The notes beneath the pieces were generated by a model. It had not been told where the DNA came from and searched no databases. It saw nothing but the letters and a program-made list of their open reading frames with translations. Shown here one piece after another: positions 8,927 through 64,000 of a stretch of 64,000 nt of DNA. The translations under genes were made by a program, and so were the position numbers. The stretch's first letter is position 1, and each line of letters begins with the position of its first letter. This DNA comes from Mobula birostris (taxonomy: Eukaryota): contig NC_092382.1 in NCBI RefSeq assembly GCF_030028105.1, forward strand, positions 100,270,699-100,334,698, in the 5' to 3' direction.

Positions 8927-9014
<88 letters not shown>

Positions 9015-11759: not shown

Positions 11760-13530
11760 TTTGAATTATAGACAATAGAGAATAGACAATAAGTGCAGGA
11801 GTAGGACATTCGGCCCTTCCAACGAGCATCGCCATTCACAGTGATCATGGTTGAACATCTACTATCAGTACCCCGTTCCTGTCCTATATCCCTTGACTCC
11901 GCTATCTTTACGAGCTCCATCTTGAAAGCATCCAGAGAATTGGCCTCCACAGCCTTCTGGGGCAGAGCATTCCAAAGGTCCACAACTCTCTGGGTGAAAA
12001 AAGTTTTTCCTGAACTCCGTTCTAAATGGCCTACCCCTTCTTCTTAAACTGTGGCCTCCGGTTCTGGACTCCCCCAACATCGGGCACATGTTTCCTGCCT
12101 CTAGCGTGTCCAATCCCTTAATAATCTTATATGTTTCAAACAGATCCCCTCTCATCCTTCTAAATTCCAGAGTATACAAGCCCGGTCGCTCCAATCTTTC
12201 AACATATGACAGTCCCGCCATCCAGGGAATTAACCTCGTGAACGTACGCTGCACTCCCTCCACAGCAAGAATGCCCCTCCTCAAATTTGGAGACCAAAAC
12301 TTCACAAAATACTCTGGATGTGGTCTCACCAGGGCCCTGTACAACTGCAGAAGGACATCTTTGCTCCTATACTCAACTCCTATGCTTACATGTTATATCT
12401 CAGCAAGTTTTGTCCCGATAAGGAAGCCAAGGATGTACCGTCAACCAACTTTATTTCGAAAAAAAAAACCTGCTTGAATTAAGTCAATCTATACCACTCA
12501 TGATCTTGTTTCCCTCGATCAAAGCTCCCTTCGTTATTCTGCAATCCAGGAAATAAAGTCCTCACGTATTCAATCTTTCTTTGTAACTCAGGTCAAGTCC
12601 TGGCCACGTGGTTCGGTTTTTGCTCTGCACTATTTCAATCTTATTGATAGTTTCTTGTAGGTAGGTGACCAAAATTGCACACAATGCTCCAAATTAGGCC
12701 TCCTCTACATTTGTATAACTTAAGCATAACATCTCATCTTCTGTACTCAATTTATGAAAGCTTTCTTTACGACCTTCCTGCATAGAGGTGACCTGATAGA
12801 GGTGTATAAGGTTATGAGAGGTATGGCTCGTGTGAATAGTCAGAGAGTGAAAGGGACAATATGAGAGGGCGCAGTTTCATGGTGCTTGGAAGTAGCTACA
12901 GAGGCGATGTCAGGGTTAAGTGTTTCATGCAGAGAGTGGAGAGTGCGTAGAATGGGCTGCTGGCGACCTTGGTGGTGGCAGAAACGATAGGGTCGTTTAA
13001 GAGACTGCTGGATAATTACATGGAACTTGGAAAAATAGAGGGCTATGGGTAACCCTAGGTAACTTCTGAAGTAAGAATATGTTCGGTGCAGCTTTGTGGG
13101 CCGAAAGGCCTGTATTGTCCAGGAGGTTTTCTGTCTCTCTTTGATTCTACATAGGGTAAGGATTTATAAGATTACGGAGTGCACAGACAGAATAGACTTT
13201 CACCTCTAGGGTCAAAATGTACAATACATTTTTAAGGTGGAGGGGGGAGTGAAAAGGAGATGTGAGAGGCAAGTCTTCCCACACAGTGCTGGGTGTCTGG
13301 AATGTGCAGCCTGGGGTGTTGGTAGAGGCAGATACATTAGAGGCTTTCGGTGATGCTTAGAACATAGAAATCTACGGCACATTACAGGCCCTGCGGCCCA
13401 CAATGTTGTACCGACCATGTAACCCACTCTAGAAACTGCCCAGAATTTCGCCCCCGCATAGCCCTCTATTTCCCTCAGCTCCGTGTACCTTTCTAAGAGT
13501 CTCTTTACGCCCGCAATCTGCCTGTGATGC
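11760..13530. mobile_element. Patchwork of CR1 3' fragments in both orientations
   Basis: [30 protein letters not shown] motif (11865-12344, minus) and several CR1 3'UTR tails. Confidence 0.8.
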
Positions 13531-14278
13531 CTCTTCCCATGAATTATGGACCTCAACAATGCAAATTTCAACATGATATTCGAACTCCTGCACCCCAATG
13601 AACTCATAAATTCGTCAGATGCTGAAAATCCAAAGCAACGGACATGCGAATTGCTGGAGGAACCTATCCAGGGTAGTCAGCATCTATGGAAATGAATAAG
13701 CAGGTGACGTTTCGGGCGGAGACCCTCCTTTCGGACTGGAAAACTGGGGGTGGGAGAGACGCCAGAATAAAAAGTTAGGAGTGGGGAAGGAAGTTAGCTA
13801 GAAAGAGATGAGTGAAACCAAATGGAGGGTGGGGGGAGAGAAGCGGGGAATCTGATTGGAGAGTTGAGTGGAGCACATAGGCAAGTGCCTGATTTCTGAA
13901 AGGCAACCTGCTAAACGTTCCCTTTCCTACCTGTGAAGCCATTTTGAAGGAGTTGGGGATCCGTATTCCCAAACGATTGTCCTCTACCGCATTCCTAGAT
14001 GCTGGTCCATTCGCTATGTGGTTCACGTCCTGCTTTGCCCTGGCAAACTGCAACACCTTCCACTGGTATGCGTTAAATTGTGTCTGACATTTTCTTCCCG
14101 ATTTTCTCAGCTGGTACAGATCCCGCTGCAATCTCTGAACCGCTCTACTTTATACACTCCGCACCCAATGTTGAAATAGCCTCATCTCGTTCAACATGTT
14201 AAAATCTTAGTCAACCTCGCCTTGCCTTGACGATAGATAGATAGATAGGTAGGTAGATGGATAGATAGATAGATAGAT

Positions 14279-14319
<41 letters not shown>

Positions 14320-14982
14320 CGAGTACTGTGTAAGCGACAATAAGATTCGTTCAGAAGGTGATAGAGAGTGAAAGAAAGAAGCAGAACGAGATGGAGAGAG
14401 GAACAGGAAGAGGGGAAATGGAGGTCAGAGACAAGGGGGAAAATGGCGAGAGAGCGAGGCGGAGAATGGGAAAGAGAGGAGAGAAACTGTGGAGTGGAAC
14501 TGTGCCGGCAACGGTGTTGGAGGCGGATACGATAAGGTCCTTCAGGAGACTTTTGGATAGGTACACGAAGCTTTGAAAAATAGAGGGCTGCGGGTAAGCC
14601 TAGTAATTGGTAAGGTGGGGACATGTACGGCACAACTTTGTAGACCGAAGGGCCTGTATTGTGTAGTAGGGTTTCGATGTTTCTATGTTTTCTATACAAT
14701 CGAGAGGGAGAAGGAGAGGGGGAGAGAGAAAAGAAGACGCCGATGACCAGGGAGGCAGGCAGACAGACTGAGACAGAAACAAGGGTAAGTGAGCAGATGC
14801 AGACGCACTGCGACATTAACGGAGTCATTAAGAGGTAACTCCCTGAATGAGCGAGGTTCCGCAAACAGATGGAGATGGATACTAATATATGTGTAACAGC
14901 AACACATTTCTAAAGAGGGAGCAGTCACCGGCGGAAAGCGAGAACGGGAGATGTGTGCAGAATATAAATCCGAATGAAGTCA

Positions 14983-15023
14983 TACGTCACGGCGGGACTG
15001 ACAGCGCCGTCGAATCTGATTGG
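14983..15023 (+). promoter_or_regulatory. V-C1 promoter: CRE-like site plus inverted CCAAT
   Basis: TACGTCAC at 14983 and GATTGG at 15018, ~130-170 nt upstream of the leader ATG. Confidence 0.5.
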
Positions 15024-15150
15024 TTCACTACGATGCATGGGCGTGGCGAACCCGTGTAATCCTTCGTCGTGTTTCCAGTGGAGCCGTACACGGAGTTATT
15101 GCGTCTCGCTCCCTGTCTCGACGGCCGGGGTTAAGTAATCGCTAGAAAAG

Positions 15151-16442
15151 ATGCTTCCATTGCTACCGCTGCTAGCTTCATTCTACTGTAAGTCATCTTT
15201 AAAAAGATTTATCTTACGTTTCACTCTCACCTTCTGCTCTCTCTGTTTACGATCGCCCTTTCGCCGCCGCTTTCCCTCGCTGCCTCTCGGGGTCTCTCTA
15301 AATCTGCGCACCTCTCCATCTGCACACGCATCGGCGGTCCATCTTTCTTCCTCGGCCCCACGGCCGCTCTCTGCCGCTTGTTTCCTATCCGATTCACTCT
15401 GACCCTTTTGTCCAGAAAGCGGCAGCCATGATAGTGCCGGTGAACCGCTTCGGCACCCGCTCCTAAGCAGGGAAACCCTTCCCTGCGAAGTGGCGACCAG
15501 AACGATACACGACACTTCAGATGTTTGCCGGAGCACAGGGGAGACTCGTTCACCCGTATCAATAGTAGAGTGGCTGAACTGTGAAGACTGTGCCCTTCGT
15601 GGTTTTACACACCTCTGTAAGGTCACCCATACGCTCCAAGGAATAAAACCCCAACCTTCCCGACCTCTCTCCGTAACTTGGTCCCTGGAATCCCGGTAAT
15701 ATCCTCGTATATCTCCCTCTGAAATCTTTTCAGCTCGGTGGCATCTTTCCTGCAGCAGGGCGACCAACACTGAACGCCGCACCCCAAGCGTGGTCTCACC
15801 GACGTCTTGCCCAATTGGAACGTGACCTCCCGACTCCCGTACTCAGCGTCCTGACGGATCAAGGCCAGCGCGCCAAACTTCGCCACGCCTGGGACCCACT
15901 GTACCACAACACTCCCCGGGGGTCCTGCAAGTCCTCCCTCTGCGGTGCATATTTCTATCAGGATCATTTCTACCCACCCTGTGCAAGCGAAATTCTCCAT
16001 GTAGCGTCACGAACAGATCTGCGCACAATTACCTTTGTAACTAAACCCTAAGCCCATTGTCATAACCGGTACTGGGGCAGACTTGAGAGATCGACTCCTG
16101 CAAATCGGTAGCTAATTTCTTGCATTCTCATTTTTTTTTCCTCTAGGGGCGAACGCAGTGACCATCCATCAGATCCCGGACACCTTCTCTGGGAGTCCCG
16201 GGGAGAAAATATCCCTGAAATGTGTTGCGCAGGGTGCCGGGACTAACACGATGCTTTGGTACAGGCAACGCGCGGGGAAGGCGCCGGAGAACCTCTTTTA
16301 CTCCACAACCGTTGGCCACGCTGTCCCGGCAGCGGAGGCGGAAGGCCTCTCGGCCGAGAGACCGAACGGCCGGGAGTTTAATTTGAAGGCCTCCGGCCTG
16401 GGGATGAACCACACGGCCCTGTACCTCTGCGCCTGGAGTCTA
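15151..16442 (+). CDS. TRBV: TCR V segment, family C (V-C1), apparently functional, closest to TRBV30
   Basis: Leader 15151-15187 MLPLLPLLASFY + GTAAGT. The 959-nt intron contains a CR1 remnant. Exon 16147-16442: AVTIHQIPDTF..ISLKC..MLWYRQRAGKAPENLFYS..LSAERP..EFNL..ALYLCAWSL. Confidence 0.87.
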
Positions 16443-16481
16443 CACGGCGACGCAGAGATTCGGCGCCGTACAACAAAAACT
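16443..16481 (+). other. 23-RSS of V-C1
   Basis: CACGGCG + 23 nt + ACAAAAACT. Confidence 0.85.
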
Positions 16482-16639
16482 GCGAGTGCTAAAAGGGGGG
16501 CGGGGCGTGACTCTCTGAGAGACGGCTGAGATCTTATCTGTGATAAGATCAGCTTTTCTTATCACGTGCGTCGTTTTGTGTCGACGTCTGAGGATTGTGG
16601 AGTTGGGGAGGAGGCGGAGACTGACAGTGTCACGATGTT

Positions 16640-17490
16640 TTAACTATATAACCATATAACAAAAACAGCACAGAAACAGGCCATCTCGGTCCTTCTAGTT
16701 CGTGCCGACCTCTTATTCTCACCCAGTCCCAGCGACCTGCACTCAGCCCATAACCCTCCATTCCTTTCCTGTCCATAGAGCTGTCCAATTTAACTTTAAA
16801 CAACAACATCGAACCTGCCTCAGCCACTTCTTCTGGAAGCTCGTTCCACACGGCTACCACTCTCAGAGTAAAGAAGTTCCCCCTCATGTTACCCCTAAAC
16901 TTTTGCCCCCTAACTCTCAACTCATGTGCTCTTGTTTGAATCTCCCCACCTCTCAATGGAAAAAACCTATCCACGTCAACTCTATCTATCCCCCTCATAA
17001 TTTTAAATACCTCTATCAAGTCCCCCCTCACCCTTCTACACTACAGAGAATAAAGACCCAACTTGTTCAACCTTTCTCTGTAATTCAGGAGATGAAACCC
17101 AGGTAACATTCTAGTAAATCCTCTCTGTACTCACTCAATTTTGTTGACCTTTTTCCTATAATTTGGTGACCAAAACTGTACACAGTACTCCAAATTTGGT
17201 CTCATCGATGCCTTGTACAATTTCAACACTACATCCCAACTCCTATACTCAATGCTCTGATGAATAAAGGCCAGCAAACCAAAAGCTTTCTTCACCACCC
17301 TATCCACATGAGATTCCACCTTCAGGGAACTATGCACCATCATTCCTAGATCCCTCTGTTCTACTGCATTCTTCAATGCCCCACCATTTACCATGTATGT
17401 CCTATTTTGATTAGTCCTACCAAAATGTAGCACCTCACATTTATCAGCATTAAACTCCACTTGCCATCTGTCAGCCCACTTTTCTAACTC
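16640..17490 (-). mobile_element. 5'-truncated CR1 LINE (mirror ~58710-59565, +)
   Basis: KWADRWQVEFNADKCEVLHFG...RPNLEYCVQFWSP...MRGDLIEVFK plus CR1 3' tail. Confidence 0.9.
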
Positions 17491-17499
17491 GCCTACAAA

Positions 17500-17640
17500 G
17501 CCAGTATCCATAACCCACTTTGTTTTTGGAATGCGGAAGGAACCGGGGAAACCCCGAGGAAACACCCACCGTCACGGAGAGGACGTTCGCAAAAGAGAAA
17601 ACCTCTAGACAGCAGCGGGAATGGAACGCCGACCGCGAGG
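17500..17640 (-). mobile_element. V-SINE/HE1-like tRNA-SINE remnant (mirror ~58560-58700)
   Basis: CGTCCTCTCCGTGACGG..GTTTCCTCGGGG..TCC..CATTCCAAA resembles the V-SINE central domain (recalled similarity). Confidence 0.5.
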
Positions 17641-18403
17641 GCTGCAGAGCGCTGCACCGGCCGCTGCGCTCCCGGGAGCGGGGCAATTGTTCCCTTCAGC
17701 CGGCATTTATCTTTTCGCTGCGACTCCGATCAAAGGAGAGCTAGGGAGGGAACCACAACTTTCACGGTGAAAGCGACTGAAAGATTCTTCCTGTAGATCG
17801 ATACCAGTCCCTGATGACAAAGGACGGTCCGTATCTGATATCCAGCACGCAATCAGAGCTCACCGTAGTGTCGGGAAACCCACTCAATCCCTGTGACGCC
17901 TTCCGTCCGTTTATGCCCCTTATCCTGGTCAGTCTGTAGAGGGTTGGAGTCTCGGATGCAAAGAGAACTGCCCTGGGACAGAAGGACGTCCCTTTAAAAC
18001 CACAGATGAGGGAGAAATTCCATCGATAGAAGGTGTTGAATCTGCGTAGAAGACTAAAGGCAGGACTCTTGACTGTGTGCAGAATCAGAGGGATCTTGGA
18101 GTCCGTGTCCATAGGACACTCAAAGCTGCTACGCAAGTTGATAATGTTGTTAAGAAGGCGTATGGCTTGTTGGCATTCATTAACGGTGGGTTTGAGTTTA
18201 AGAGCCGTGAGGTAATGTTACAGCGATATAAGACGTCAATTAGAGTTGACTTGAGTACGCTGCTCAGTTCTGTTCACCTCATTACAGAAGGGATATGGGT
18301 ACTACAGAGAGAGTGCAGTGGAGATTTAGGAGGATGTTTCCCGGGTTGGAGAGAGCGTCTTATGGAAGTAGGTTGAGTGAACTTGGCGTTGACTCCCTGG
18401 TGC

Positions 18404-18447
<44 letters not shown>

Positions 18448-19097
18448 CACAGTAACAGAGACACAAAGAAAGAAAGGGGAGAGAATGAGTTCAAGAACTT
18501 TAAGAGAATATTGTTAAGTGACAAACAGAGGCTAAAACACAGACCGTAGAACTCGAAGACCAAAATAGGCCGTTTGCCCTTTCCCCCACTATTTCTAGGT
18601 TAAAAACGATGCCAAATTTTGTTGGGAGAGTTCGGACGGATCTCCGCTGATGGACACGTCTATTCCGAACGGTCAAATCGAGGGAATAGGCTGGTCGAAT
18701 TTCTAATGCCTTCCAGTGAGCGGTCAACCGCGAATCTGTCTGATAATAACCCCAACATCGCATTTAGTGTGTTTCCTCCTAACAGGACAACGGTTCAAAG
18801 AAAGATAATTTTTTACTCGGGATCATGTTCTGGATTGCCTGTGAGTAGTTTTGCTAAATATCTTACTCCTCTCTCGCTTGAGTTTCTTCTGATGTCTTGA
18901 TCTCCCAAAGATTTCTTCCTGATCGGGCACAGAGGTGAACACTGCCCGTCAGGGGGTCGTTGCCTCTGCTTGTCTGTGCCTCGGTGGTTGTCCGTCCACA
19001 CCGGGGTCTCCGACTTCCCTTTCCCTTTTCAACGAACGCCTTTGTCACTGGGACGCCTGTCATCCTCTCCTACTCTCATCCAACTCTCTGACTTCTG

Positions 19098-19401
19098 GTG
19101 AGAGGTTGGTGACAGTGCGCCCAGAATCCGGACCCTTTCGGCGCACCGCCCGCCGCCAAAATGAAATTGCAGGCAAAGCGGAAGGTGGGAGCAGCCCTGG
19201 TTGCACCCCATGGTTCAGGAAGTATCCGGGAAAGTGATCCCCAGAACCTCATTTATCGGATGGTCAACATGCATCGAGAGCCGAGGGGGAATGCGGGCAG
19301 ATTAACGCCCAAGAGGCTAAAAAAACAGATGAAATTGACTTCCAGCGACCTAACTGCCAATCCCTTCGCACGCTATTTGTGCGCTTGGAGCTTACACGGC
19401 C
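19098..19401 (+). pseudogene. Degenerate TCR V pseudogene (paralog of 3946-4251)
   Basis: Frameshifted; 3' frame PQNLIYRMVNMH...RYLCAWSL followed by CACGGCC. Confidence 0.75.
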
Positions 19402-20022
19402 ACAGTCTTATAACACGACAAAATTGATCCTATAACCGCTGCCGACGGTTAGACATTCTATCATCTATATTACAATCCGGTTAACGTGTTTATATTTTCT
19501 TGTTCCTCAGTTATACCCATTAGGCCTCATTCGTCGAGCTGTCCAGTCTGCCCTGACTGCGCATTGCTGTGACCTTCCCCTTGACACGTCGTGCCACGTA
19601 ACCCCGTTAATCCCTCTCGCTGTACCCCACCCACAACAACGGAACACCGGAATACAGAGCTGCCGGTAGTTCACCTCCTACAACCAAGTCTCACTGAAGG
19701 CGACAATGGGGTAAATCCACGGGCGGACACAAACTATAACTCCGTCACATTTCCCATGATCCTCCTTGCGTTGAAGCCTGCGCAGCTCAGAACTTTAGAC
19801 CCACCATGCCCAACCTATGTTTATTCCCGACCTTGTGTGTAGAATTAAAAAAATCCCTCTCCACAACCACTCTAGTGTCTGGAGCGCTGGGTTCGTTCTC
19901 CCCCCGACACTCCAGTTTAACCACCCACCCCCACCCCCGCACCTGCGCTCCCATTGACAGTCGCGGCTCTCCTCAGAGTTGCAGGTTATTGTTCGGTTTC
20001 ACCATCCGGTCGGGCAGCTGTG

Positions 20023-20673
20023 TAAACTCCAGGCGCAGAAATAACGAGCCGAATGATTCGCAGTCAGACTTTTAGAAATCAGCTTGAACTGGTTGTCCTG
20101 CCTCTTGGCTGTTAACCCGTCCGCCGTCTCCTTCGGTTCCAGATGCTCGTTGTTCGCCTAGTAAAACAGGTACTGAGGTCCGTTCCCCGGGTACTGTCTG
20201 TACCAGTACATATAATCAGTATCACTCCCTCCTTCCGCCGTACAATGCAACTCCATCCCGTCGCCGGGCATTGCGGAAAACGCGGCGGGAGTCTGGCGGA
20301 CAGTCACCGATGTCCCGCCTTTGGACCGGGAGGGGAACAAAAAGGAAGGAGGAAACACTGAGTGACCGGCGTCCGGAGGAGGGCGGCGGAGAGTGGAACA
20401 AGAAAGGGGAAATGAAGGGAGACGTTGGGAATGAAACAGCAATTGAGGGAGAGACACGACGGGTGCGGTTACAGAGAAAGAAATATAGTCGACATCTGAA
20501 GAACGTTAGATGAGTGAGAGAGAATGATAATAATAATAATAAGCAGAAGAAGAGGAAGAAGAAGAAGAAGAAAAAAAAGATGAAGAAGACGAAAGTAAGA
20601 AATTAAATAAAACCTACATACACGTAAACCAGGCTGTGATCCACGGCAAGAAAAGTTCTTGTCCGTGGTTCAT
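20023..20673 (-). pseudogene. TRBV: TCR V pseudogene, family B (psi-B2)
   Basis: Leader 20622-20673 MNHGQELFLPWITAWFT with GTATGT donor. Exon 20023-20318 has TAG at 20158-20160. RSS is CACAGCT-23-ACAATAACC (19984-20022). Confidence 0.87.
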
Positions 20674-20943
20674 TTTAACGCAATGCCGAAAGAGAGGAGG
20701 GTGACGAATCGCCGAGGTAACAGCAGAGGGCTTTGCGCTTTGCGCGTTAGGAGACACATGGGATATCAGTCACACCCCTTCCGCCGAGTTAACCAATCGG
20801 ATTCGATGACGTAGTTAAAGCGGCCCCTTCGGCGCATCATAAAGTTTTACTTGTTATGAACGCCAGCGATTCTGCAGAGTCTAGAAATCCAAAGCAACGC
20901 CTTCAAAATGCTGGTGGAGCTCAGCACGCCTGGCAGCGTTAAT

Positions 20944-21607
20944 AGAAGCATATCTTGGTGTTGAAATTAGCACGGATCTTAACTGGGCATCCCACATCAA
21001 TCAGAGTGCAGCCAAAGCAAATAAAATGGCGTGTATGCTGAGAAGGCACCTCCACTCATGTGGTAAGTCCGTCAAGGACATGGCGTACGAGACACTCGAC
21101 CGTTCAAAGCTTGAGAATTGCGCGGCCATGTGGGATTCCCATCAAGCTGACTATAAAAGTTCATCGAAAAATATCCAACGTCGTGCTGCTCGCTTTGTGT
21201 GAAACAATTACAGCAGGAAATCCAGTGTCAACAACATGCTCTCTAACCTTCAATGAGAACCACTTGAAAACCGGCGTATTAAACTACGGTTAATTTTCAT
21301 TTTCGAAGAAGTGCACACCATCACTCCATCAAACATCCAAATTCGACACAGGGTCAGTTCTACTCGACAGGAAACTGGACCTCACATATTGGAAACCCCT
21401 TCATTGAATAGAATTTGCTACCAGTACTCCCTGTACCCAAGATGAACAAAAGAGTGGAATCTTCTGCCGCCAGACCTGAGCAGTATTTCTGATATGACTA
21501 ATTTTAAGAGATAAACTAAATCAAATCGATTTTGGGGATCCAGTCAACAAAGCTTATTTTACAATGCAACTGTAAAATTTTGCGCAGTACCAAGCAGAAA
21601 CAGAAGC
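20944..21607 (+). mobile_element. 5'-truncated non-CR1 LINE (RTE-X-like), mirror 54561-55241
   Basis: YLGVEISTDLNWASHINQSAAKANKMACMLRRHL..YETLVRPKLE.C..WDSH; tail AAGCAGAAACAGAAGC; absent at the paralogous sites ~5727 and ~23135. Clade call is an inference. Confidence 0.6.
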
Positions 21608-22007
21608 GGAAATGAACGGTCCGGGCCGAGACGCTTCTCCAGCAGCTGGGAGGAAGCGAGAAAAAGCCAGAATTAAAACCTAAGGGGACGAGGAACAGGA
21701 ATTGCGAGAAATGGATAGGTTAAGCCAGGTGGGTGAAAAAGGGAAGGGTAGGGTGATGAAAGAATCTGCTGTTGAAAGGAGAAAGGAAAGGAAGCCCGGC
21801 ATTTGTGGGGGGGGGAGGTTGCCGAGGTGATAGGTGAGAAGGGGTAAGAGGCTAGAGTGGGCGGAAGAGGCGAGTGGGAGGAATTGTTTAAACTCGAAAG
21901 TGAATTCGATATTGCTGTCACCAAGTTGGAGGCTGCCCATACGGGATATAAGCTGTCGCTCAGCACCCTCCGAATCGCGGTCTAATTTCCTGTAACTAAG
22001 ATCATAA

Positions 22008-22066
<59 letters not shown>

Positions 22067-23718: not shown

Positions 23719-23750
<32 letters not shown>

Positions 23751-48187: not shown

Positions 48188-48227
<40 letters not shown>

Positions 48228-53267: not shown

Positions 53268-53306
53268 CACAGCCGCCCGACCGGATGGTGAAACCGAACA
53301 AAAACC
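53268..53306 (+). other. 23-RSS of V-B
   Basis: CACAGCC + 23 nt + ACAAAAACC. Confidence 0.92.
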
Positions 53307-54102
53307 TCCAACTCTGAAGACAGCCTCGACTGTCAATGGGAGCGCAGGTGCGGGGGTGGGGGCGGGTGTTTAAACTGGAGTGTCGGGGGGAGAACGAACC
53401 CAGAACTCCAGAATAGACAGTAGAGTGGTTGTGGGGACAGATTTTGTGCAACCTACCGACAAGGTCAGGAATAAATTAGGTTGGGCATGGTGGGTCTAAA
53501 GTTCTGAGCTGCGTGTGCTTCAACGCAAGGAGGATCATGGGAAGTGTGACGGAGTTATAGTTTGTGTCCGCACGTGGATTTACCGCATTGCCGCCTTCAG
53601 TGAGACTTCGTTGGAGGAGGTGCAGTACCGGCAGCTCTGTAATCCGGGGTTTCGCTGTTGTGGGCGTGATAAAGCCAGAGGGATTAACGGGGGGGGGGGG
53701 GGGTTGTAGCACGACCTGTCGGGGGAAATATCACTGCAATGCTCAGTCAGAACAGACTGCAGAGCTCGACCACTGAGGCATTATGCATAGAAGTGATTAA
53801 TCGGAAAGTATAACCACGTTAACTGGATCAGATTATAGAACGTCCAACAGTACGCGAAAGTTACCGGAGTAATTTTCTTGAGAGACTTTTGCAAGAAACA
53901 TAAGGTGGTGATAACAGGAGATTTTAACTGTCCAAATATTGACTGCGACTCCGTTCTGTAAAAATGCCATGATAGGAAGCAGTTTTTTTCTCAAATGTGT
54001 TGAAGGAAGTTTCCGTAACCAGTGCATCTAGGTTCCAGTCAGAGAGAGATTCTGCTGTCTCATTCGTCTCACATGCGCTTGTAAATCAGAGAGCGAAAGA
54101 TA

Positions 54103-54137
<35 letters not shown>

Positions 54138-55511
54138 GGAAAAAGAGAGAGAGATTATGATCTTAGTTACAGGAAATTAGACCGCGATTCCGAGGGTGCT
54201 GAGCGACAGCTTATATCCCGTACGGGCAGCCTCCAACTTGGTGACAGCAATATCGAATTCACTTTCGAGTTTAAACAATTCCTCCCACTCGCCTCTTCCG
54301 CCCACTCTAGCCTCTTACCCCTTCTCACCTATCACCTCGGCAACCTCCCCCCCCCCCCCCCACAAATGCCGGGCTTCCTTTCCTTTCTCCTTTCAACAGG
54401 AGATTCTTTCATCACCCTACCCTTCCCTTTTTCACCCACCTGGCTTAACCTATCCATTTCTCGCAATTCCTGTTCCTCGTCCCCTTAGGTTTTAATTCTG
54501 GCTTTTTCTCGCTTCCTCCCAGCTGCTGGAGAAGCGTCTCGGCCCGGACCGTTCATTTCCGCTTCTGTTTCTGCTTGGTACTGCGCAAGCGCAGCCGGAC
54601 GGCTGTTACAACGCGCAGTCGCTGTTAAAGCTTTGTTGACTGGATCCCCAAAATCGATTTGATTTAGTTTATCTCTTAAAATTAGTCATATCAGAAATAC
54701 TGCTCAGGTCTGGCGGCAGAAGATTCCACTCTTTTGTTGATCTTGGGTAGAGGGAGTACTGGTAGCAAATTCTATTCAATGAAGGGGTTTCCAATATGTG
54801 AGGTCCAGTTTCCTGTCGAGTAGAACTGACCCCTGTGTCGAATTTGGATGTTTGATGGAGTGATGGTGTGCACTTCTTCGAAAATGAAAATTAACCGTAG
54901 TTTAATACGCCGGTTTTCAAGTGGTTCTCATTGAAGGTTAGAGAGCATGTTGTTGACACTGGATTTCCTGCTGTAATTGTTTCACACAAAGCGAGCAGCA
55001 CGACGTTGGATGTTTTTCGATGAACTTTTTATTGTCAGCTTGATGGGAATCCCACAAGGCCGCGCAATTCTCAAGCTTTGGACGGACGAGTGTCTCGTAC
55101 GCCATGTCCTTGACGGACTTACCACATGAGTGGAGGTGCCTTCTCAGCATACACGCCATTTTATTTGCTTCGGCTGCACTCTGATTGATGTGGGATGCCC
55201 AGTTAAGATCCGTGCTAATTTCAACACCAAGATATGCTTCTATTAACGCTGCCAGGCGTGCTGAGCTCCACCAGCATTTTGAAGGCGTTGCTTTGGATTT
55301 CTAGAATCTGCAGAATCGCTGGCGTTCATAACAAGTAAAACTTTATGATGCGCCGAAGGGGCCGCTTTAACTACGTCATCGAATCCGATTGGTTAACTCG
55401 GCGGAAGGGGTGTGACTGATATCCCATGTGTCTCCTAACGCGCAAAGCGCAAAGCCCTCTACTCTTACCTCGGCGATTCGTCACCATCCTCTCTTTCGGC
55501 ATTGCGTTAAA

Positions 55512-56164
55512 ATGAACCACGGACAAGAACTTTTCTTGCTGTGGATCCCAGCCTGGTTTACGTGTATGTAGGTTTTATTTAATTTCTTACTTTCGTCTTC
55601 TTCATCTTTTTTTTCTTCTTCTTCTTCTTCCTCTTCTTCTGCTTATTATTATTATTATTATCATTCTACTCACTCATCTAACGTTCTTCAGATGTCGACT
55701 ATATTTCTTTCTCTGTAACCGCACCCGTCGTGTCTCTCCCTCAATTGCTGTTTCATTCCCTACGTCTCCCTTCATTTCCCCTTTCTTGTTCCACTCTCCG
55801 CCGCCCTCCTCCGGACGCCGGTCACTCAGTGTTTCCTCCTTCCTTTTTGTTCCCCTCCCGGTCCAAAGGCGGGACATCGGTGACCGTCCGCCAGACTCCC
55901 GCCGCGTTTTCCGCAATGCCCGGCGACGGGATGGAGTTGCATTGTACGGCGGAAGGAGGGAGTGATACTGATTATATGTACTGGTACAGACAGTACCCGG
56001 GGAACGGACCTCAGTACCTGCTTTACTAGGCGAACAACGAGCATCTGGAACCGAAGGAGACGGCGGACGGGTTAACAGCCAAGAGGCAGGACAACCAGTT
56101 CAAGCTGATTTCTAAAAGTCTGACTGCGAATCATTCGGCTCGTTATTTCTGCGCCTGGAGTTTA
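55512..56164 (+). pseudogene. TRBV: TCR V pseudogene, family B (psi-B3, mirror of psi-B2)
   Basis: Leader 55512-55563; exon 55869-56164 with TAG at 56027-56029; RSS CACAGCT-23-ACAATAACC (56165-56203). Confidence 0.87.
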
Positions 56165-56785
56165 CACAGCTGCCCGACCGGATGGTGAAACCGAACAATA
56201 ACCTGCAACTCTGAGGAGAGCCGCGACTGTCAATGGGAGCGCAGGTGCGGGGGTGGGGGTGGGTGGTTAAACTGGAGTGTCGGGGGGAGAACGAACCCAG
56301 CGCTCCAGACACTAGAGTGGTTGTGGAGAGGGATTTTTTTAATTGTACACACAAGGTCGGGAATAAACATAGGTTGGGCATGGTGGGTCTAAAGTTCTGA
56401 GCTGCGCATGCTTCAACGCAAGGAGGATCATGGGAAATGTGACGGAGTTATAGTTTGTGTCCGCCCGTGGATTTACCCCATTGTCGCCTTCAGTGAGACT
56501 TGGTTGTAGGAGGCGAACTACCGGCAGCTCTGTATTCCGGTGTTCCGTTGTTGTGGGTGGGGTACAGCGAGAGGGATTAACGGGGTTACGTGGCACGACG
56601 TGTCAAGGGGAAGGTCACAGCAATGCGCAGTCAGGGCAGACTGGACAGCTCGACGAATGAGGCCTAATGGGTATAACTGAGGAACAAGAAAATATAAACA
56701 CGTTAACCGGATTGTAATATAGATGATAGAATGTCTAACCGTCGGCAGCGGTTATAGGATCAATTTTGTCGTGTTATAAGACTGT

Positions 56786-57089
56786 GGCCGTGTAAGCTCC
56801 AAGCGCACAAATAGCGTGCGAAGGGATTGGCAGTTAGGTCGCTGGAAGTCAATTTCATCTGTTTTTTTAGCCTCTTGGGCGTTAATCTGCCCGCATTCCC
56901 CCTCGGCTCTCGATGCATGTTGACCATCCGATAAATGAGGTTCTGGGGATCACTTTCCCGGATACTTCCTGAACAATGGGGTGCAACCAGGGCTGCTCCC
57001 ACCTTCCGCTTTGCCTGCAATTTCATTTTGGCGGCGGGCGGTGCGCCGAAAGGGTCCGGATTCTGGGCGCACTGTCACCAACCTCTCAC
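56786..57089 (-). pseudogene. Degenerate TCR V pseudogene (mirror of 19098-19401)
   Basis: Same frameshifted RYLCAWSL sequence. Confidence 0.75.
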
Positions 57090-57741
57090 CAGAAGTCAGA
57101 GAGTTGGATGAGAGTAGGAGAGGGTGACAGGCGTCCCAGTGACAAAGGCGTTCGTTGAAAAGGGAAAGGGAAGTCGGAGACCCCGGTGTGGACGGACAGC
57201 GACCGAGGCACAGACAAGCAGAGGCAACGACCCCCTGACGGGCAGTGTTCACCTCTGTGCCCGATCAGGAAGAAATCTTTGGGAGATCAAGACATCAGAA
57301 GAAACTCAAGAGAGAGAGGAGTAAGATATTTAGCAAAACTACTCACAGGCAATCCAGAACATGATCCCGAGTAAAAAATTATCTTTCTTTGAACCGTTGT
57401 CCTGTTAGGAGGAAACACACTAAATGCGATGCTGGGGTTATTATCAGACAGATTCGCGGTTGACCGCTCACTGGAAGGCATTAGAAATTCGACCAGCCTA
57501 TTCCCTCGATTTGACCGTTCGGAATAGACGTATCCATCAGAGGAGATCCGTCCGAACTCTCCCAACAAAATTTGGCATCGTTTTTAACCTAGAAATTGTG
57601 GGGGAAAGGGCAAACGGCCTGTTTTGGTCTTCGAGTTCTACGGTCTGTGTTTTAGCCTCTGTTTGTCACTTAACAATATTCTCTTAAAGTTCTTGAACTC
57701 ATTCTCTCCCCTTTCTTTCTTTGTGTCTCTGTTACTGTGCA

Positions 57742-57799
<58 letters not shown>

Positions 57800-59722
57800 G
57801 CACCAGGGAGTCAACGCCAAGTTCACTCAACCTACTTCCATAAGACGCTTTCTCCAACCCGGGAAACATCCTCCTAAATCTCCACTGCACTCTCTCTGTA
57901 GTACCCATATCCCTTCTGTAATGAGGTGAACAGAACTGAGCAGCGTACTCAAGTCAACTCTAATTGACGTCTTATATCGCTGTAACATTACCTCACGGCT
58001 CTTAAACTCAAACCCACCGTTAATGAATGCCAACAAACCATACGCCTTCTTAACAACATTATCAACTTGCGTAGCAGCTTTGAGTGTCCTATGGACACGG
58101 ACTCCAAGATCCCTCTGATTCTGCACACAGTCAAGAGTCCTGCCTTTAGTCTTCTACGCAGATTCAACACCTTCTATCGATGGAATTTCTCCCTCATCTG
58201 TGGTTTTAAAGGGACGTCCTTCTGTCCCAGGGCAGTTCTCTTTGCATCCGAGACTCCAACCCTCTTCAGACTGACCAGGATAAGGGGCATAAACGGACGG
58301 AAGGCGTCACAGGGATTGAGTGGGTTTCCCGACACTACGGTGAGCTCTGATTGCGTGCTGGATATCAGATACGGACCGTCCTTTGTCATCAGGGACTGGT
58401 GTCGATCTACAGGAAGAATCTTTCAGTCGCTTTCACCGTGAAAGTTGTGGTTCCCTCCCTAGCTCTCCTTTGATCGGAGTCGCAGCGAAAAGATAAATGC
58501 CGGCTGAAGGGAACAATTGCCCCGCTCCCGGGAGCGCAGCGGCCGGTGCAGCGCTCTGCAGCCCTCGCGATCGGCGTTCCATTCCCGCTGCTGTTTAGAG
58601 GTTTTCTCTTTTGCGAACGTCCTCTCCGTGACGGTGAGTGTTTCCTCGGGGTTTCCCCGGTTCCTTCCGCATTCCAAAAACAAAGTGGGTTATGGATACT
58701 GGCTTTGTAGGCGAGTTAGAAGAGTGGGCTGACAGATGGCAGATGGAGTTTAATACTGATAAATGTGAGGTGCTACATTTTGGTAGGACTAATCAAAATA
58801 GGACATACATGGTAAATGGTAGGGCATTGAAGAATGCAGTAGAACAGAGGGATCTAGGAATGATGGTGCATAGTTCCCTGAAGGTGGAATCTCATGTGGA
58901 TAGGGTGGTGAAGAAAGCTTTTGTTTTGCTGGCCTTTATTCATCAGAGCATTGAGTATAGGAGTTAGGGTGTAATGTTGAAATTGTACAAGGCATCGATG
59001 AGACCAAATTTGGAGTACTGTGTACAGTTTTGGTCACCGAATTATAGGAAAAATGTCAACAAAATTGAAAGAGTACAGAGAGGATTTACTAGAATGTTAC
59101 CTGGGTTTCATCTCCTGAATTACAGAGAAAGGTTGAACAAGTTGGGTCTTTATTCTCTGTAGTGTAGAAGGGTGACGGGGGACTTGATAGAGGTATTTAA
59201 AATTATGAGGGGGATAGATAGAGTTGACGTGGATAGGCTTTTTCCATTGAGAGGTGGGGAGATTCAAACAAGAGCACATGTGTTGAGAGTTAGGGGGCAA
59301 AAGTTTAGGGGTAACATGAGGGGGAACTTCTTTACTCTGAGAGTGGTAGCTGTGTGGAACGAGCTTCCAGAAGAAGTGGCTGAGGCAGGTTCCATGTTGT
59401 TGTTTAAAGTTAAATTGGACAGCTCTATGGACAGGAAAGGAATGGAGGGTTATGGGCTGAGTGCAGGTCGCTGGGACTGGGTGAGAATAAGAGGTCGGCA
59501 CGAACTAGAAGGACCGAGATGGCCTGTTTCTGTGCTGTTTTTGTTATATGGTTATATAGTTTTAAACATCGTGACACTGTCAGGCTCCACCTCCTCCCCA
59601 ACTCCACAATCCTCAGACGTCGACGCAAAACGACGCACGTGATAAGAAAAGCTGATCTTATCACAGATAAGATCTCAGCCGTCTCTCAGAGAGTCACGCC
59701 CCGCCCCCCTTTCAGCACTCGC

Positions 59723-59761
59723 GGTTTTTGTTGTACGGCGCCGAATCTCTGCGTCGCCGTG
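59723..59761 (-). other. 23-RSS of V-C2
   Basis: CACGGCG + 23 nt + ACAAAAACC. Confidence 0.85.
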
Positions 59762-61053
59762 TAGACTCCAGGCGCAGAGGTACAGGGCCGTGTGGTTCAT
59801 CCCCAGGCCGGAGGCCTTCAAGTTAAACTCCCGGCCGTTCGGTCTCTCGGCCGAGAGGCCTTCCGCCTCCGCTGCCGGGACAGCGTGGCCGACGGTTGTG
59901 GAGTAAAAGAGGTTCTCCGGCGCCTTCCCCGCGCGTTGCCTGTACCAAAGCATCGTGTTAGTCCCGGCACCCTGCGCAACACATTTCAGGGATATTTTCT
60001 CCCCGGGACTCCCAGAGAAGGTGTCCGGGATCTGATGGATGGTCACTGCGTTCGCCCCTAGAGGAAAAAAAAATGAGAATGCAAGAAATTAGCTACCGAT
60101 TTGCAGGAGTCGATCTCTCAAGTCTGCCCCAGTACCGGTTATGACAATGGGCTTAGGGTTTAGTTACAAAGGTAATTGTGCGCAGATCTGTTCGTGACGC
60201 TACATGGAGAATTTCGCTTGCACAGGGTGGGCAGAAATGATCCTGATAGAAATATGCACCGCAGAGGGAGGACTTCCAGGACCCCCGGGGAGTGTTGTGG
60301 TACAGTGGGGCCCAGGCGTGGCGAAGTTTGGCGCGCTGGCCTTGATCCGTCAAGACGCTGAGTACGGGAGTCGGGAGGTCACGTTCCAATTGGGCAAGAC
60401 GTCGGTGAGACCACGCTTGGGGTGCGGCGTTCAGTGTTGGTCGCCCTGCTGCAGGAAAGATGCCACCGAGCTGAAAATATTTCAGAGGGAGATATACGAG
60501 GATATTACCGGGATTCCAGGGACCAAGTTACGGAGAGAGGTCGGGAAGGTTGGGGTTTTATTCCTTGGAGCGTAGGGGTGACCTTACAGAGGTGTGTAAA
60601 ACCACGAAGGGCACAGTCTTCACAGTTCAGCCACTGTACTATTGATACGGGTGAACGAGTCTCCCCTGTGCTCCGACAAACATCTGAAGTGTCGTGTATC
60701 GTTCTGGTCGCCACTTCGCAGGGAATGGTTTCCCTGCTTAGGAGCGGGTGGCGAAGCGGTTCACCGGCACTATCATGGCTGCCGCTTTCTGGACAAGAGG
60801 GTCAGAGTGAATCGGATAGGAAACAAGCGGCAGAGAGCGGCCGCGGGGCCGAGGAAGAAAGATGGACCGCCGATGCGTGTGCAGATGGAGAGGTGCGCAG
60901 ATTTAGAGAGACCCCGAGAGGCAGCGAGGGAAAGCGGCGGCGAAAGGGCGATCGTAAACAGAGAGAGCAGAAGGTGAGAGTGAAACGTAAGATAAATCTT
61001 TTTAAAGATGACTTACAGTAGAATGAAGCTAGCAGCGGTAGCAATGGAAGCAT
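59762..61053 (-). CDS. TRBV: TCR V segment, family C (V-C2, mirror of V-C1), apparently functional
   Basis: Leader 61017-61053; exon 59762-60057; V protein identical to V-C1. Confidence 0.87.
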
Positions 61054-64000
61054 CTTTTCTAGCGATTACTTCACCCCGGCCGTCGAGACAGGGAGCGAGA
61101 CGCAATAAATCCGTGTACGGCTCCACCGGAAACACGACGAAGGATTACACGGGTTCGCCACGCCCGTGCATCGTAGTGAACCAATCAGATTCGACGGCGC
61201 TGTCAGTCCCGCCGTGACGTATGACTTCATTCGGATTTATATTCTGCACACATCTCCCGTTCTCCCTTTCCGCCGGTGACTGTTCCCTCTTTAGAAATGT
61301 GTTACTATTACACGTATATTAGTATCCATCTCCATCTGTTTGCGGAACCTCGCTCATTCAGGGAGTTACCTCTTAATTACTGCGTTAATATCGCAGTGCG
61401 TCTGCATCTGCTCACTTACCCTTGTTTCTGTCTCAGTCTGTCTGCCTGCCTCCCTGGTCATCGGCGTCTTCTTTTCTCTCTCCCCCTCTCCTTCTCCCTC
61501 TCGATTGTATAGAAAACATAGAAACATCGAAACCCTACTACACAATACAGGCCCTTCGGTCTACAAAGTTGTGCCGTACATGTCCCCACCTTACCAATTA
61601 CTAGGCTTACCCGCAGCCCTCTATTTTTCAAAGCTCCGTGTACCTATCCAAAAGTCTCTTGAAGGACCCTATCGTATCCGCCTCCAACACCGTTGCCGGC
61701 ACAGTTCCACTCCACAGTTTCTCTCCTCTCTTTCCCATTCTCCGCCTCGCTCTCTCGCCATTTTCCCCCTTGTCTCTGACCTCCATTTCCCCTCTTCCTG
61801 TTCCCCTCTCCATCTCGTTCTGCTTCTTTCTTTCACTCTCTATCACCTTCTGAACGAATCTTATTGTNNNNNNNNNNNNNNNNNNNNNNNNNNNNNNNNN
61901 NNNNNNNNNNNNNNNNNNNNNNNNNNNNNNNNNNNNNNNNNNNNNNNNNNNNNNNNNNNNNNNNNNNNNNNNNNNNNNNNNNNNNNNNNNNNNNNNNNNN
62001 NNNNNNNNNNNNNNNNNNNNNNNNNNNNNNNNNNNNNNNNNNNNNNNNNNAGGTTGACTAAGATTTTAACATGTTGAACGAGATGAGGCTATTTCAACAT
62101 TGGGTGCGGAGTGTATAAAGTAGAGGGGTTCAGAGATTGCAGCGGGATCTGTACCAGCTGAGAAAATCGGGAAGAAAATGTCAGACACAATTTAACGCAT
62201 ACCAGTGGAAGGTGTTGCAGTTTGCCAGGGCAAAGCAGGACGTGAACCACATAGCGAATGGACAAGCATCTAGGAATGCGGTAGAGGACAATCGTTTGGG
62301 AATACGGATCCCCATTTCCTTCAAAATGGCTTCACAGGTAGGAAAGGGAACGTTTAGCAGGTTGCCTTTCAGAGCTCAGGCACTTGCCTATGTGCTCCAC
62401 TCAACTCTCCAATCAGATTCCCCGCTTCTCTCCCCCCACCCTCCATTTGGTTTCACTCATCTCTTTCTAGCTAACTTCCATCCCCACCCCTAACTTTTTA
62501 TTCTGGCGTCTCCCCCACCCCCAGTTTTCCAGTCCGAAAGGAGGGTCTCCGCCCGAAACGTCACCTGCTTATTCATTTCCATAGATGCTGACTACCCTGG
62601 ATAGGTTCCTCCAGCAATTTGCATGTCCGCTGCTTTGGATTTTCAGCATCTGACGAATTTATGAGTTCATTGGGGTGCAGGAGTTCGAATATCATGTTGA
62701 AATTTGCATTGTTGAGGTCCGTAATTCATGGGAAGAGGCATCACAGGCAGATTGCGGGCGTAAAGAGACTCTTAGAAAGGTACACGGAGCTGAGGGAAAT
62801 AGAGGGCTATGCGGGGGCGAAATTCTGGGCAGTTTCTAGAGTGGGTTACATGGTCGGTACAACATTGTGGGCCGCAGGGCCTGTAATGTGCCGTAGATTT
62901 CTATGTTCTAAGCATCACCGAAAGCCTCTAATGTATCTGCCTCTACCAACACCCCAGGCTGCACATTCCAGACACCCAGCACTGTGTGGGAAGACTTGCC
63001 TCTCACATCTCCTTTTCACTCCCCCCTCCACCTTAAAAATGTATTGGACATTTTGACCCTAGAGGTGAAAGTCTATTCTGTCTGTGCACTCCGTAATCTT
63101 ATAAATCCTTACCCTATGTAGAAACAAAGAGAGACAGAAAACCTCCTGGACAATACGGGCCTTTCGGCCCACAAAGCTGCACCGAACATATTCTTACTTC
63201 AGAAGTTACCTAGGGTTACCCATAGCCCTCTATTTTTCCAAGTTCTATGTTATTATCCAGCAGTTTCTTAAACGACCCTATCGTTTCTGCCACCACCAAC
63301 GTCGCCAGCAGCCCATTCCACGCACTCTCCACTCTCTGCATGAAACACTTAACCCTGACATCGCCTCTGTAGCTACTTACAAGCACCATGAAACTGCGCC
63401 CTCTCATATTGTCCCTTTCACCCTCTGACTATTCACACGATCCATACCTCTCATAACCTTATACACCTCTATCAGGTCACCTCTATGCAGGAAGGTCGTA
63501 AAGAAAGCTTTCATAAATTGAGTACAGAAGATGGGATGTTATGTTCAAGTTGTACAAATGTAGAAGAGGCCTAATTTGGAGCATTGTGTGCAATTTGGTC
63601 ACCTACCTACAAGAAACATATCAATAAGATTGAAATAGTGCAGAGCAAACATCGAACCACGTGGCCAGGACTTGACCTGAGTTACAAAGAAAGATTGAAT
63701 ACGCGAGGACCTTATTTCGTGGATTGCAGCATAACGAAGGGAGCTTTGAGCGAGGGAAACAAGACCATGAGGGGTATAGATTGACTAAATTCAAGCAGAT
63801 TCTCTGTTTTGGAAATAAAGTTGGTTGACACTACATCCTTGGCTTCCTTATCGGGAGACAACTTCTTGCTGAGATATAACACGTAAGTATAGGAGTAAAG
63901 AGGTCCTTCTGCAGTTGTACAGGGCCCTGGTGAGACCACACCTGGAGTATTTTGTGCAGTTTTGTTCTGCAGATTTGAGGAAGGACATTCTTGCTATTGA

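What the first reader, a model, noticed from the sequence alone, without database searches (positions are those of the whole stretch)
12262..64000. Palindrome with ~17-18 kb arms duplicating the V array around a ~16 kb spacer
Seen: 12.26-29.49 kb is mirrored at 46.05-64 kb, including V genes, promoters, LINE insertions and microsatellites. Both inner ends stop at N gaps at the same homologous base (TGTTATCT|N and N|AGATAAC). Inference: either a real inverted segmental duplication inside a rearranging locus, or an alternative haplotype scaffolded in inverted orientation.
Basis: partly seen in the sequence, partly recalled or inferred. Interest (0 to 1): 0.72.

Follow-up and report, generated by a model that had tools for sequence, protein, structure and literature searches.

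The report
Inverted duplication in shark TCR V array
Two roughly 20 kb blocks of T-cell-receptor V gene segments lie as mirror images around a 16.5 kb spacer in a cartilaginous-fish genome; this is most likely a real, recent inverted duplication of a known kind, but assembly gaps at its inner ends mean an assembly artefact is not excluded.

Summary
The mirror is real and larger than reported. Window 9707-29494 pairs, inverted, with 46054-66502, which runs 2.5 kb past the window end, so the reported outer end at 12262 only reflects where the window stops.

The arms have two layers:
- An inner 16 kb differing by 1.43%.
- An outer 3 kb differing by about 8%. A collinear 78-80% tail continues beyond it.

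Both outer ends lie in gap-free sequence that continues into different flanks. The inner ends stop at gaps on or beside polypyrimidine tracts.

Contigs from four runs of one animal show both arm versions: 27 of 27 variant sites carry exactly the right arm's letter. They show no third haplotype. Contig k-mer depth per assembled copy equals that of the neighbouring left-specific sequence in three of four runs, not half of it. The spacer occurs once in the assembly and the arms twice.

The locus also holds other direct and inverted V duplications in gap-free sequence, and V segments lie about equally on both strands.

I rate a real inverted segmental duplication at about 0.62. An artefact, either a heterozygous inversion or a haplotig scaffolded as a palindrome, is at about 0.28. 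The kind is known from human IGK and avian IGH.

The parts
9707..29494 (.). Left arm of the palindrome, inside gap-free contig A, which extends at least 39 kb further left
   Evidence: collinear inverted alignment to 66502-46054
46054..64000 (.). Right arm. It continues to about 66502, 2.5 kb beyond the window. It is made of contig D (46054-61867) plus the start of contig E (62051 onward; E is gap-free for at least 32 kb)
29495..46053 (.). Spacer of 16.5 kb: gap, contig B (29665-42467: a LINE with endonuclease and RT ORFs, V34537 and V39902 on the minus strand), gap, contig C (42610-45897), gap. Its unique parts occur once in the assembly
9707..12650 (.). Outer, older layer of the left arm, 8.2% divergent from 63700-66502. 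It includes V10362 and a LINE 3' fragment that both arms share
12700..28434 (.). Inner, young layer, 1.43% divergent (ts/tv 1.47; 53 of 222 differences in CpG context)
29495..29664 (.). Gap A|B. B starts with 130-200 bp that are 85-90% C+T on the plus strand, as expected after this unit, so the join fits the unit structure
42468..42609 (.). Gap B|C. The flanks are unremarkable; continuity is unknown
45898..46053 (.). Gap C|D, the inner junction of the right arm. C's end is not purine-rich and has no homology to the arm, so nothing in the sequence supports this join
61868..62050 (.). Gap D|E. Its flanks are homologous to 14337 and 14217, the two sides of an uninterrupted simple repeat in the left arm, so D and E are collinear with a contiguous copy
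14218..14336 (.). Simple-repeat tract in the left arm, homologous in position to gap 61868-62050
   Evidence: reads cut at 14227-14327
16158..16457 (+). V exon V16158, open, with a 23-bp-spacer signal. Its right-arm twin V60046 (59747-60046, minus strand) differs at 2 of 300 nt and 0 of 100 aa
20008..20307 (-). V20307, a pseudogene with an in-frame stop. Its twin V55880 (55880-56179, plus strand) has the same stop, so the stop predates the split of the arms
28708..29007 (-). V29007, open, canonical signal CACAGCC-23-ACAAAAACC. Its twin V46542 (46542-46841, plus strand) differs at 13 nt and 11 aa, concentrated in CDR1 and CDR2
28615..28886 (.). Tract where the left arm shares derived letters specifically with paralog V8413, which looks like gene conversion
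52806..53427 (+). 622 bp present only in the right arm, holding intact V52983 (52983-53282) with a canonical 23-bp signal. The left arm has a clean deletion at 22740/22741
10063..10362 (-). V10362, open. Its right-arm counterpart V65850, beyond the window, is frameshifted

Best explanation
This is a real inverted segmental duplication, a palindrome with a spacer, inside a TRB-like V-segment array of a cartilaginous fish.

Proposed history, which is inferred:
1. An older inverted pair of V units already flanked the region. It survives as the roughly 92% outer layer and the 78-80% tail.
2. The adjacent 17 kb block (12.7-29.5 kb) was later copied in reverse next to the right-hand member of that pair. 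One junction formed by homology within the old inverted repeat, so it left no sharp breakpoint.
3. The other junction fell in or beside a polypyrimidine/polypurine tract at the inner end.
4. The copies have since diverged by 1.4%. Each lost a different V: a 622-bp deletion on the left and a frameshift in V65850 on the right. They also exchanged sequence with paralogs by gene conversion.

Effect: the array gains V segments with intact 23-bp-spacer signals on the opposite strand. Depending on where the D-J-C part lies, the V segments of one arm would join by deletion and those of the other by inversion.
For: Shown:
- The mirror exists, and its extent and layers are measured.
- Both outer ends lie in gap-free contigs that continue into non-homologous flanks, at least 39 kb on the left and at least 27 kb on the right.
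- D|E is collinear with the ungapped left arm, and identity is the same on both sides of that gap: 99.2% at 14.0-14.2 kb and 97.8% at 14.5-15.0 kb.
- Depth over the stretch homologous to contig D is not lower than over the stretch homologous to contig E. That rules out D alone being a haplotig.
- Contig k-mer depth divided by local multiplicity gives an arm/flank ratio of 1.08 (deep run X1), 0.96 (X3) and 1.13 (X4), against 0.5 expected if the arms were alleles.
- All 27 variant sites seen in read contigs carry exactly the right arm's letter, so both arm versions are real sequence and not errors.
- The arms occur exactly twice and the spacer once in the 4.0 Gb assembly, with no leftover haplotigs.
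- No heterozygous site was seen in about 1.1 kb of left-specific contigs across four runs, whereas the arms differ by 1.4%.
- Gap-free sequence of the same locus holds a 98.0% direct V duplication and a roughly 90% inverted V pair with a 1.9 kb spacer. V strands split 15 plus to 14 minus, and V-bearing homologous pairs split 17 direct to 14 inverted.
- The arm differences have a natural mutational spectrum.
Against: - Gaps separate the duplicated pair, which is a hallmark of false duplications (PMC9516828).
- Contig D (15.8 kb) lies wholly within the right arm and has gaps at both ends.
- Nothing in the sequence supports the C|D join.
- Only two haplotypes are visible in the single animal available.
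- One of the four runs (X2) gives an arm/flank depth ratio of 0.59.
- The depths are per-contig k-mer means from Logan contigs, which the tool itself says are no copy number.
- The orientation of contig E relative to contig A rests on scaffolding evidence I could not see.
Confidence: 0.62

Rival explanations
1. Assembly artefact from heterozygosity. The animal carries the roughly 36 kb segment (inner arm plus spacer) in both orientations, as a heterozygous inversion between the older flanking inverted V units. Alternatively it simply has two divergent alleles of the inner arm. The assembler kept the left junction from one haplotype (contig A) and the right junction from the other (contigs D and E). 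The scaffold therefore shows a palindrome that no single chromosome has.
For: - Gaps lie between the pair, and contig D is bounded by gaps on both sides (criteria in PMC9516828).
- Both arms break at the same homologous base, as a bubble's end would.
- Exactly two haplotypes appear in the reads.
- The abrupt identity step at about 12.6-12.75 kb could be the border between a paralogous repeat and an allelic segment.
- The C|D join is unsupported.
- Run X2 gives a depth ratio of 0.59.
- Inversions between inverted SDs do occur in such loci, for example a human IGK haplotype (PMC11327106).
Against: - Three of four runs, including the only deep one, give arm/flank per-copy depth near 1.0 rather than 0.5.
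- The spacer should then also exist as a second copy about 1.4% divergent, yet the assembly has only one.
- A 1.4% allelic divergence with 58 indels sits beside left-specific flank sequence with no heterozygous site. That would need an old balanced polymorphism.
- The version in which only D is a haplotig is contradicted by equal depth over the stretches homologous to D and to E.
Confidence: 0.28
2. The duplication is real but the layout is wrong. The small contigs B, C and D, or contig E, are misplaced or misoriented. The true arrangement would then differ from the scaffold, for example a direct rather than inverted copy, or a different or absent spacer.
For: - Contigs B, C and D measure 12.8, 3.3 and 15.8 kb, sizes that chromatin-contact scaffolding orients poorly (my own knowledge).
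- The C|D and B|C joins have no support in the sequence.
Against: - A|B fits the expected polypyrimidine tract on the correct strand.
- D|E is collinear with the left arm.
- E is contiguous with at least 27 kb of right flank, and A with at least 39 kb of left flank.
- The older 78-92% homology between A and E has the same inverted sense as the young arms.
Confidence: 0.07

Closest known systems
Human IGK locus: proximal and distal V clusters as two large inverted segmental duplications (PMC11327106)
   Same: Both are inverted duplications of a block of V segments within a rearranging antigen-receptor locus, separated by a spacer. Both show paralog gene conversion and copy-specific gene losses. 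In both, V segments on the opposite strand must join by inversion.
   Different: - This one is about 25 times smaller (20 kb arms against about 0.5 Mb).
- It lies in a TRB-like locus of a cartilaginous fish.
- It has two age layers.
- Its existence on one chromosome is not yet proven.
Avian IGH 'cross-stitch' architecture of recurrent inverted duplications (bioRxiv 10.64898/2026.09.05.749481)
   Same: - V units are repeatedly copied in reverse.
- V strands are about equally split (15/14 here).
- Palindromes of different sizes and ages occur.
- Gaps and coverage loss occur at low-complexity sequence in such loci.
   Different: - Avian units average 2.8 kb and are mostly pseudogene donors for somatic gene conversion.
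- Here many V segments are open with canonical recombination signals.
- The youngest arm here is 20 kb.
- The preprint states that no analogous architecture is known at IGH of other vertebrates. The locus here is a TCR locus, not IGH.
Inverted-repeat-mediated and fold-back inverted duplications (PMC3907307, PMC7467729; the DUP-TRP/INV-DUP model is from my own knowledge)
   Same: One junction lies within a pre-existing inverted repeat and the other is a non-homologous junction. A spacer lies between the arms.
   Different: Those are de novo pathogenic or experimental events. Here the mechanism is inferred from layers of identity alone.
Heterotype false duplication in assemblies (PMC9516828)
   Same: A gap lies between the two copies, the copies differ at haplotype-like sites, and one copy is a small contig.
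   Different: Arm depth is not half that of the neighbouring sequence in three of four runs. The outer ends are inside long contigs with different flanks. The spacer is not duplicated.

Membership tests
Inverted segmental duplication (palindrome with spacer) in an antigen-receptor V array | Two long arms in reverse-complement orientation with high identity, far beyond chance | tested here: met
   About 19.5 kb aligned at 97.4% overall
Inverted segmental duplication (palindrome with spacer) in an antigen-receptor V array | Both arms present on the same chromosome, so each is at full diploid copy number | tested here: inconclusive
   Per-copy contig k-mer depth of arms against left-specific flank is 1.08, 0.96 and 1.13 in three runs but 0.59 in one. 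Only contigs were available, not raw reads
Inverted segmental duplication (palindrome with spacer) in an antigen-receptor V array | Single molecules spanning arm to spacer at both inner junctions | not testable with these tools
   Only short de Bruijn contigs of one sample were available, and they stop at the simple repeats
Inverted segmental duplication (palindrome with spacer) in an antigen-receptor V array | Arms carry V segments with recombination signals on opposite strands | tested here: met
   Pairs V16158(+)/V60046(-) and V29007(-)/V46542(+), each with a heptamer-23-nonamer signal
Heterotype false duplication (Ko et al. 2022) | Assembly gap between the duplicated pair | tested here: met
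   Three gaps lie between the arms and one lies within the right arm
Heterotype false duplication (Ko et al. 2022) | Half (haploid) read depth on each copy | tested here: inconclusive
   Relative to adjacent left-specific sequence this is not met in X1, X3 and X4 and is met in X2. There is no genome-wide baseline
Heterotype false duplication (Ko et al. 2022) | Copy-specific k-mers of both copies present in reads | tested here: met
   27 of 27 variant sites carry the other arm's letter. True paralogs would give the same result
Heterotype false duplication (Ko et al. 2022) | Discordant read pairs or linked reads across the join | not testable with these tools
   No raw paired or long reads were served
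Homotype (error-derived) false duplication | Differences between copies lack read support or look like sequencing errors | tested here: not met
   Independent runs carry both letters at the sites. ts/tv is 1.47 and 24% of differences are in CpG context
TRBV gene segments | V-set Ig domain ending in Cys plus a few codons, followed by heptamer, 23-bp spacer and nonamer | tested here: met
   Pfam V-set E 1e-9 to 1e-12. The sequence reads CACAGCC, then 23 nt, then ACAAAAACC
TRBV gene segments | Beta-chain identity: linkage to TRB D-J-C, or closest relatives being V-beta | tested here: inconclusive
The best single-domain solved chains are TCR beta (5xov_J, 3hg1_E), but antibody scFv chains score as high. 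D-J-C was not located.

The most novel reading that the evidence does not exclude
The TRB-like V array of this cartilaginous fish is built by recurrent inverted and direct duplication of V units. V strands split 15/14 and palindromes of about 80%, 90% and 98.6% identity are nested within each other. That would be the same cross-stitch architecture recently described as peculiar to avian IGH. Here, however, it occurs in a TCR locus whose V segments keep open frames and canonical signals. The architecture would then not be tied to pseudogene-donor gene conversion, and inversional V(D)J joining would be routine in this locus. The 20 kb palindrome would be its newest layer.
Probability: 0.45. Interest if true: 0.55.

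Novelty: new member of a known kind. Interest (0 to 1): 0.36.

Why it matters
If real, the palindrome adds four or five V segments on the opposite strand. It also shows how a TCR V array grows in a cartilaginous fish: by reverse copying next to an older inverted repeat, followed by reciprocal V loss and paralog gene conversion. It would extend the inverted-duplication architecture known from human IGK and avian IGH to a TCR locus at the base of jawed vertebrates. If it is an artefact, V-gene counts for this species are inflated by about five segments. In that case the locus would more probably hold a 36 kb inversion polymorphism, which would matter for repertoire genetics.

Tried and rejected
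1. Third-haplotype test. I laid four runs on 10500-16499 and looked for variant letters belonging to neither arm. None were found: 27 of 27 sites carry the right arm's letter. This is uninformative between the hypotheses. All runs come from one sample, only contigs are kept, and contigs drop minor variants.

2. Copy-number probe with the 622 bp unique to contig D. Every run, including the deep one, holds only 0.32-0.45 of its sampled words. A third of those words are shared with V paralogs. The contig graphs evidently lose V-exon parts, so the probe says nothing about copy number.

The sizes are therefore only lower bounds.

4. Search for leftover haplotigs of arms or spacer on other scaffolds found none.

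5. Solved-structure search to fix the chain type supports TCR beta among single-domain chains but does not exclude other V types.

6. Earlier notes of this scan list other inverted duplications in this genome, unverified and on other pieces. They were not used. A word search for TRB constant or J notes found nothing.

7. 'Only contig D is a haplotig while E's homology is real' is rejected: depth over the stretch homologous to D is at least that over the stretch homologous to E.

8. An error-derived duplicate is rejected.

9. I did not try to read or infer the letters of any gap. Homologous copies were used only for coordinates and base composition.
Full report
**What is there**

The window is C17:100270699-100334698 of a 4.0 Gb assembly with 4715 sequences. 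It has four N runs: 29495-29664, 42468-42609, 45898-46053 and 61868-62050. These cut it into five contigs:
- A, up to 29494
- B, 29665-42467
- C, 42610-45897
- D, 46054-61867
- E, from 62051

Self-alignment confirms the mirror: 14337-22740 with 61867-53429, 22746-29494 with 52801-46054, and 12264-14217 with 63995-62051. The last block ends five bases from the window's end, so I fetched 30 kb on each side. There are no further gaps in those 60 kb. The inverted homology continues to 9707 paired with 66502, and then as a collinear 78-80% tail out to 4282 paired with 71138. The reported outer end at 12262 is therefore set by the window's edge. The arms measure about 19.8 and 20.4 kb and the spacer 16.5 kb.

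**Anatomy of the arms**

A column-by-column alignment shows three zones:

| Zone (left-arm coordinates) | Divergence |
|---|---|
| 12700-28434 | 1.43% (ts/tv 1.47; 53 of 222 differences in CpG context) |
| 28435-29494 (innermost 1 kb) | 5.0% |
| 9707-12650 | 8.2% |

An abrupt step lies at about 12.6-12.75 kb. There are 58 indels. Only one is large: 622 bp (52806-53427) present in the right arm alone.

The extra divergence at the inner end is partly explained. Over 28615-28886 the left arm shares derived letters specifically with paralog V8413, 20 kb away. That is the signature of gene conversion, and it falls in the CDR2 region of the V exon.

**Gene content**

The ORFs are V-set domains and LINE endonuclease or reverse-transcriptase pieces. 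The V exons end in Y-F-C-A-W-S and are followed by CACAGCC, a 23-nt spacer and ACAAAAACC. The best single-domain solved relatives are TCR beta chains. I accept 'TRB-like' but did not locate D-J-C.

Paired V segments:
- V16158/V60046: 2 nt and 0 aa differences.
- V20307/V55880: both carry the same in-frame stop.
- V29007/V46542: 13 nt and 11 aa differences, in CDR1 and CDR2.
- V10362 is open and its partner V65850 is frameshifted.
- V52983 is intact on the right and deleted on the left.

Each arm has thus lost a different V.

**The gaps, tested first as the scan's program asked**

Three of the four gaps sit on or beside strongly strand-biased simple sequence.

- D|E: its flanks are homologous to 14337 and 14217, the two sides of an uninterrupted simple repeat (14218-14336) in the left arm. 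D and E are therefore collinear with a contiguous copy. Identity is alike on both sides, 99.2% and 97.8%.
- A|B: tracts of 300-360 bp that are at least 88% pyrimidine follow the homologous point in other V units (8871-9190, 10861-11190, 35511-35850). B begins with 130-200 bp that are 85-90% C+T on the right strand, so this join fits the unit structure.
- B|C: nothing can be said.
- C|D: C's end is neither purine-rich nor homologous to anything in the arms. This join, the inner junction of the right arm, is the weak point.

No coding sequence crosses a gap. I did not infer any unread letters.

The coincidence that both arms stop at the same base is explained by that base being the edge of the tract.

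**Real duplication or artefact**

False duplications typically show half depth, a gap between the copies, discordant links and haplotype-specific k-mers (PMC9516828). The gap criterion is met.

Only one animal of the species is available, and only as de Bruijn contigs. Raw depth, spanning molecules and multi-animal phasing could therefore not be tested.

I laid four runs on 10500-16499. All 27 variant sites carry exactly the right arm's letter. Both versions are thus real sequence, which excludes an error-derived duplicate. No third haplotype appears, and that result fits either reading.

The contigs carry mean k-mer depths. I divided each by the local 31-mer multiplicity and compared arm contigs with contigs from the left-specific outer zone:

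| Run | Arm/flank ratio |
|---|---|
| X1 (the only deep run) | 1.08 |
| X3 | 0.96 |
| X4 | 1.13 |
| X2 | 0.59 |

Equal copy number per assembled copy predicts 1.0. 'Arms are alleles, flank diploid' predicts about 0.5. Depth over the stretch homologous to contig D is also not below that over the stretch homologous to contig E, which excludes 'only D is a haplotig'. These are noisy figures, and the tool warns against reading them as copy number, so I treat them as moderate evidence.

**Structural arguments**

- Both outer ends of the homology lie inside gap-free contigs that run on into unrelated flanks. A simple haplotig cannot do that.
- The only allelic model that fits is a heterozygous inversion of inner arm plus spacer between the older inverted V units.
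  - That model predicts a second copy of the spacer, about 1.4% divergent. The assembly has one copy of the spacer and two of the arms, with nothing on unplaced scaffolds.
  - It also needs 1.4% allelic divergence beside left-specific sequence that showed no heterozygous site in about 1.1 kb across four runs.
- Gap-free sequence of the same locus holds a direct V-unit duplication at 98.0% (-29644..-27383 with -25360..-23099) and an inverted V pair at about 90% with a 1.9 kb spacer (85202-87591 with 91941-89509). V strands split 15 to 14, and V-bearing homologous pairs split 17 direct to 14 inverted across all identity bands. Young duplications and inverted duplications are thus an established habit of this array, independent of any gap.

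**Most likely mechanism (inferred)**

An older inverted pair of V units flanked the region. The neighbouring 17 kb was then copied in reverse next to the right-hand member. One junction formed by homology within the old repeat, so only an identity step remains and no sharp breakpoint. The other junction formed in or beside a polypyrimidine/polypurine tract.

This matches inverted-repeat-mediated and fold-back models of inverted duplication (PMC3907307, PMC7467729; the DUP-TRP/INV-DUP model is from my own knowledge). The copies then diverged, lost different V segments and exchanged patches with paralogs.

Functionally, the V segments of the two arms face opposite ways. One set must join to D-J by inversion, as the distal V segments of human IGK do (PMC11327106; the joining mode is from my own knowledge).

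**Comparison and novelty**

The closest known cases are the human IGK proximal and distal inverted duplications and the recurrent inverted duplications of avian IGH. The avian preprint also reports coverage loss and gaps at low-complexity sequence in such loci.

This would be a small, young member of that kind in a TCR locus of a cartilaginous fish: a new member of a known kind. The broader pattern, alternating V strands and nested palindromes with functional-looking V segments, is the more interesting lead.

**Verdict**

| Reading | Probability |
|---|---|
| Real inverted duplication | about 0.62 |
| Heterozygosity artefact (inversion or haplotig) | about 0.28 |
| Real duplication but wrong layout | about 0.07 |

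The observation itself is confirmed, with corrected bounds. Interest is moderate to low (0.36).

Noticed in passing
beyond the window: window coordinates 85202-87591 and 89509-91941 (loci L022/L023): An older palindrome of about 90% identity with a 1.9 kb spacer, wholly in gap-free sequence. Each arm holds a V of a different family (motif ...MKCLQKGQ..WYRQ).
   Followed up: partly
beyond the window: window coordinates -29644..-27383 and -25360..-23099 (locus L026): A direct tandem duplication of a V unit at 98.0% identity with no indels, in gap-free sequence. Its divergence matches that of the palindrome's inner layer.
   Followed up: partly
window 8871-9190, 10861-11190, 35511-35850; 68031-68390 beyond the window: Polypyrimidine/polypurine tracts of 300-360 bp lie about 0.45 kb upstream of many V exons. 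Three of the four assembly gaps sit on or beside such tracts. They may be break-prone sites as well as sequencing obstacles.
   Followed up: partly
window 49545-51059 versus 24700-26020: A LINE reverse-transcriptase ORF is open for 504 aa in the right arm but split into 238 and 191 aa in the left arm.
   Followed up: no
window 783-1323 versus 39962-39414: Another inverted V pair (V843 on plus, V39902 on minus) at 85.6% identity. Its axis differs from that of the main palindrome, so inverted duplications with different centres are nested here.
   Followed up: no
unplaced scaffolds C4653, C645, C1131, C1455, C1219 and others: Many 80-85% matches to the V16158-type V exon lie on small unplaced scaffolds. 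Part of this V family is therefore not placed on chromosomes.
   Followed up: no
window 14142 and 15972: At these two arm-difference sites all four runs' contigs carry the right arm's letter and none carries the left arm's letter.
   Followed up: no
runs X5-X8 and X15 (organism B) and X9, X16, X17 (organism C): Related species hold 5-16% of the sampled words of these stretches, so relatives with roughly 6-9% divergence have sequence data that could date the duplication.
   Followed up: no
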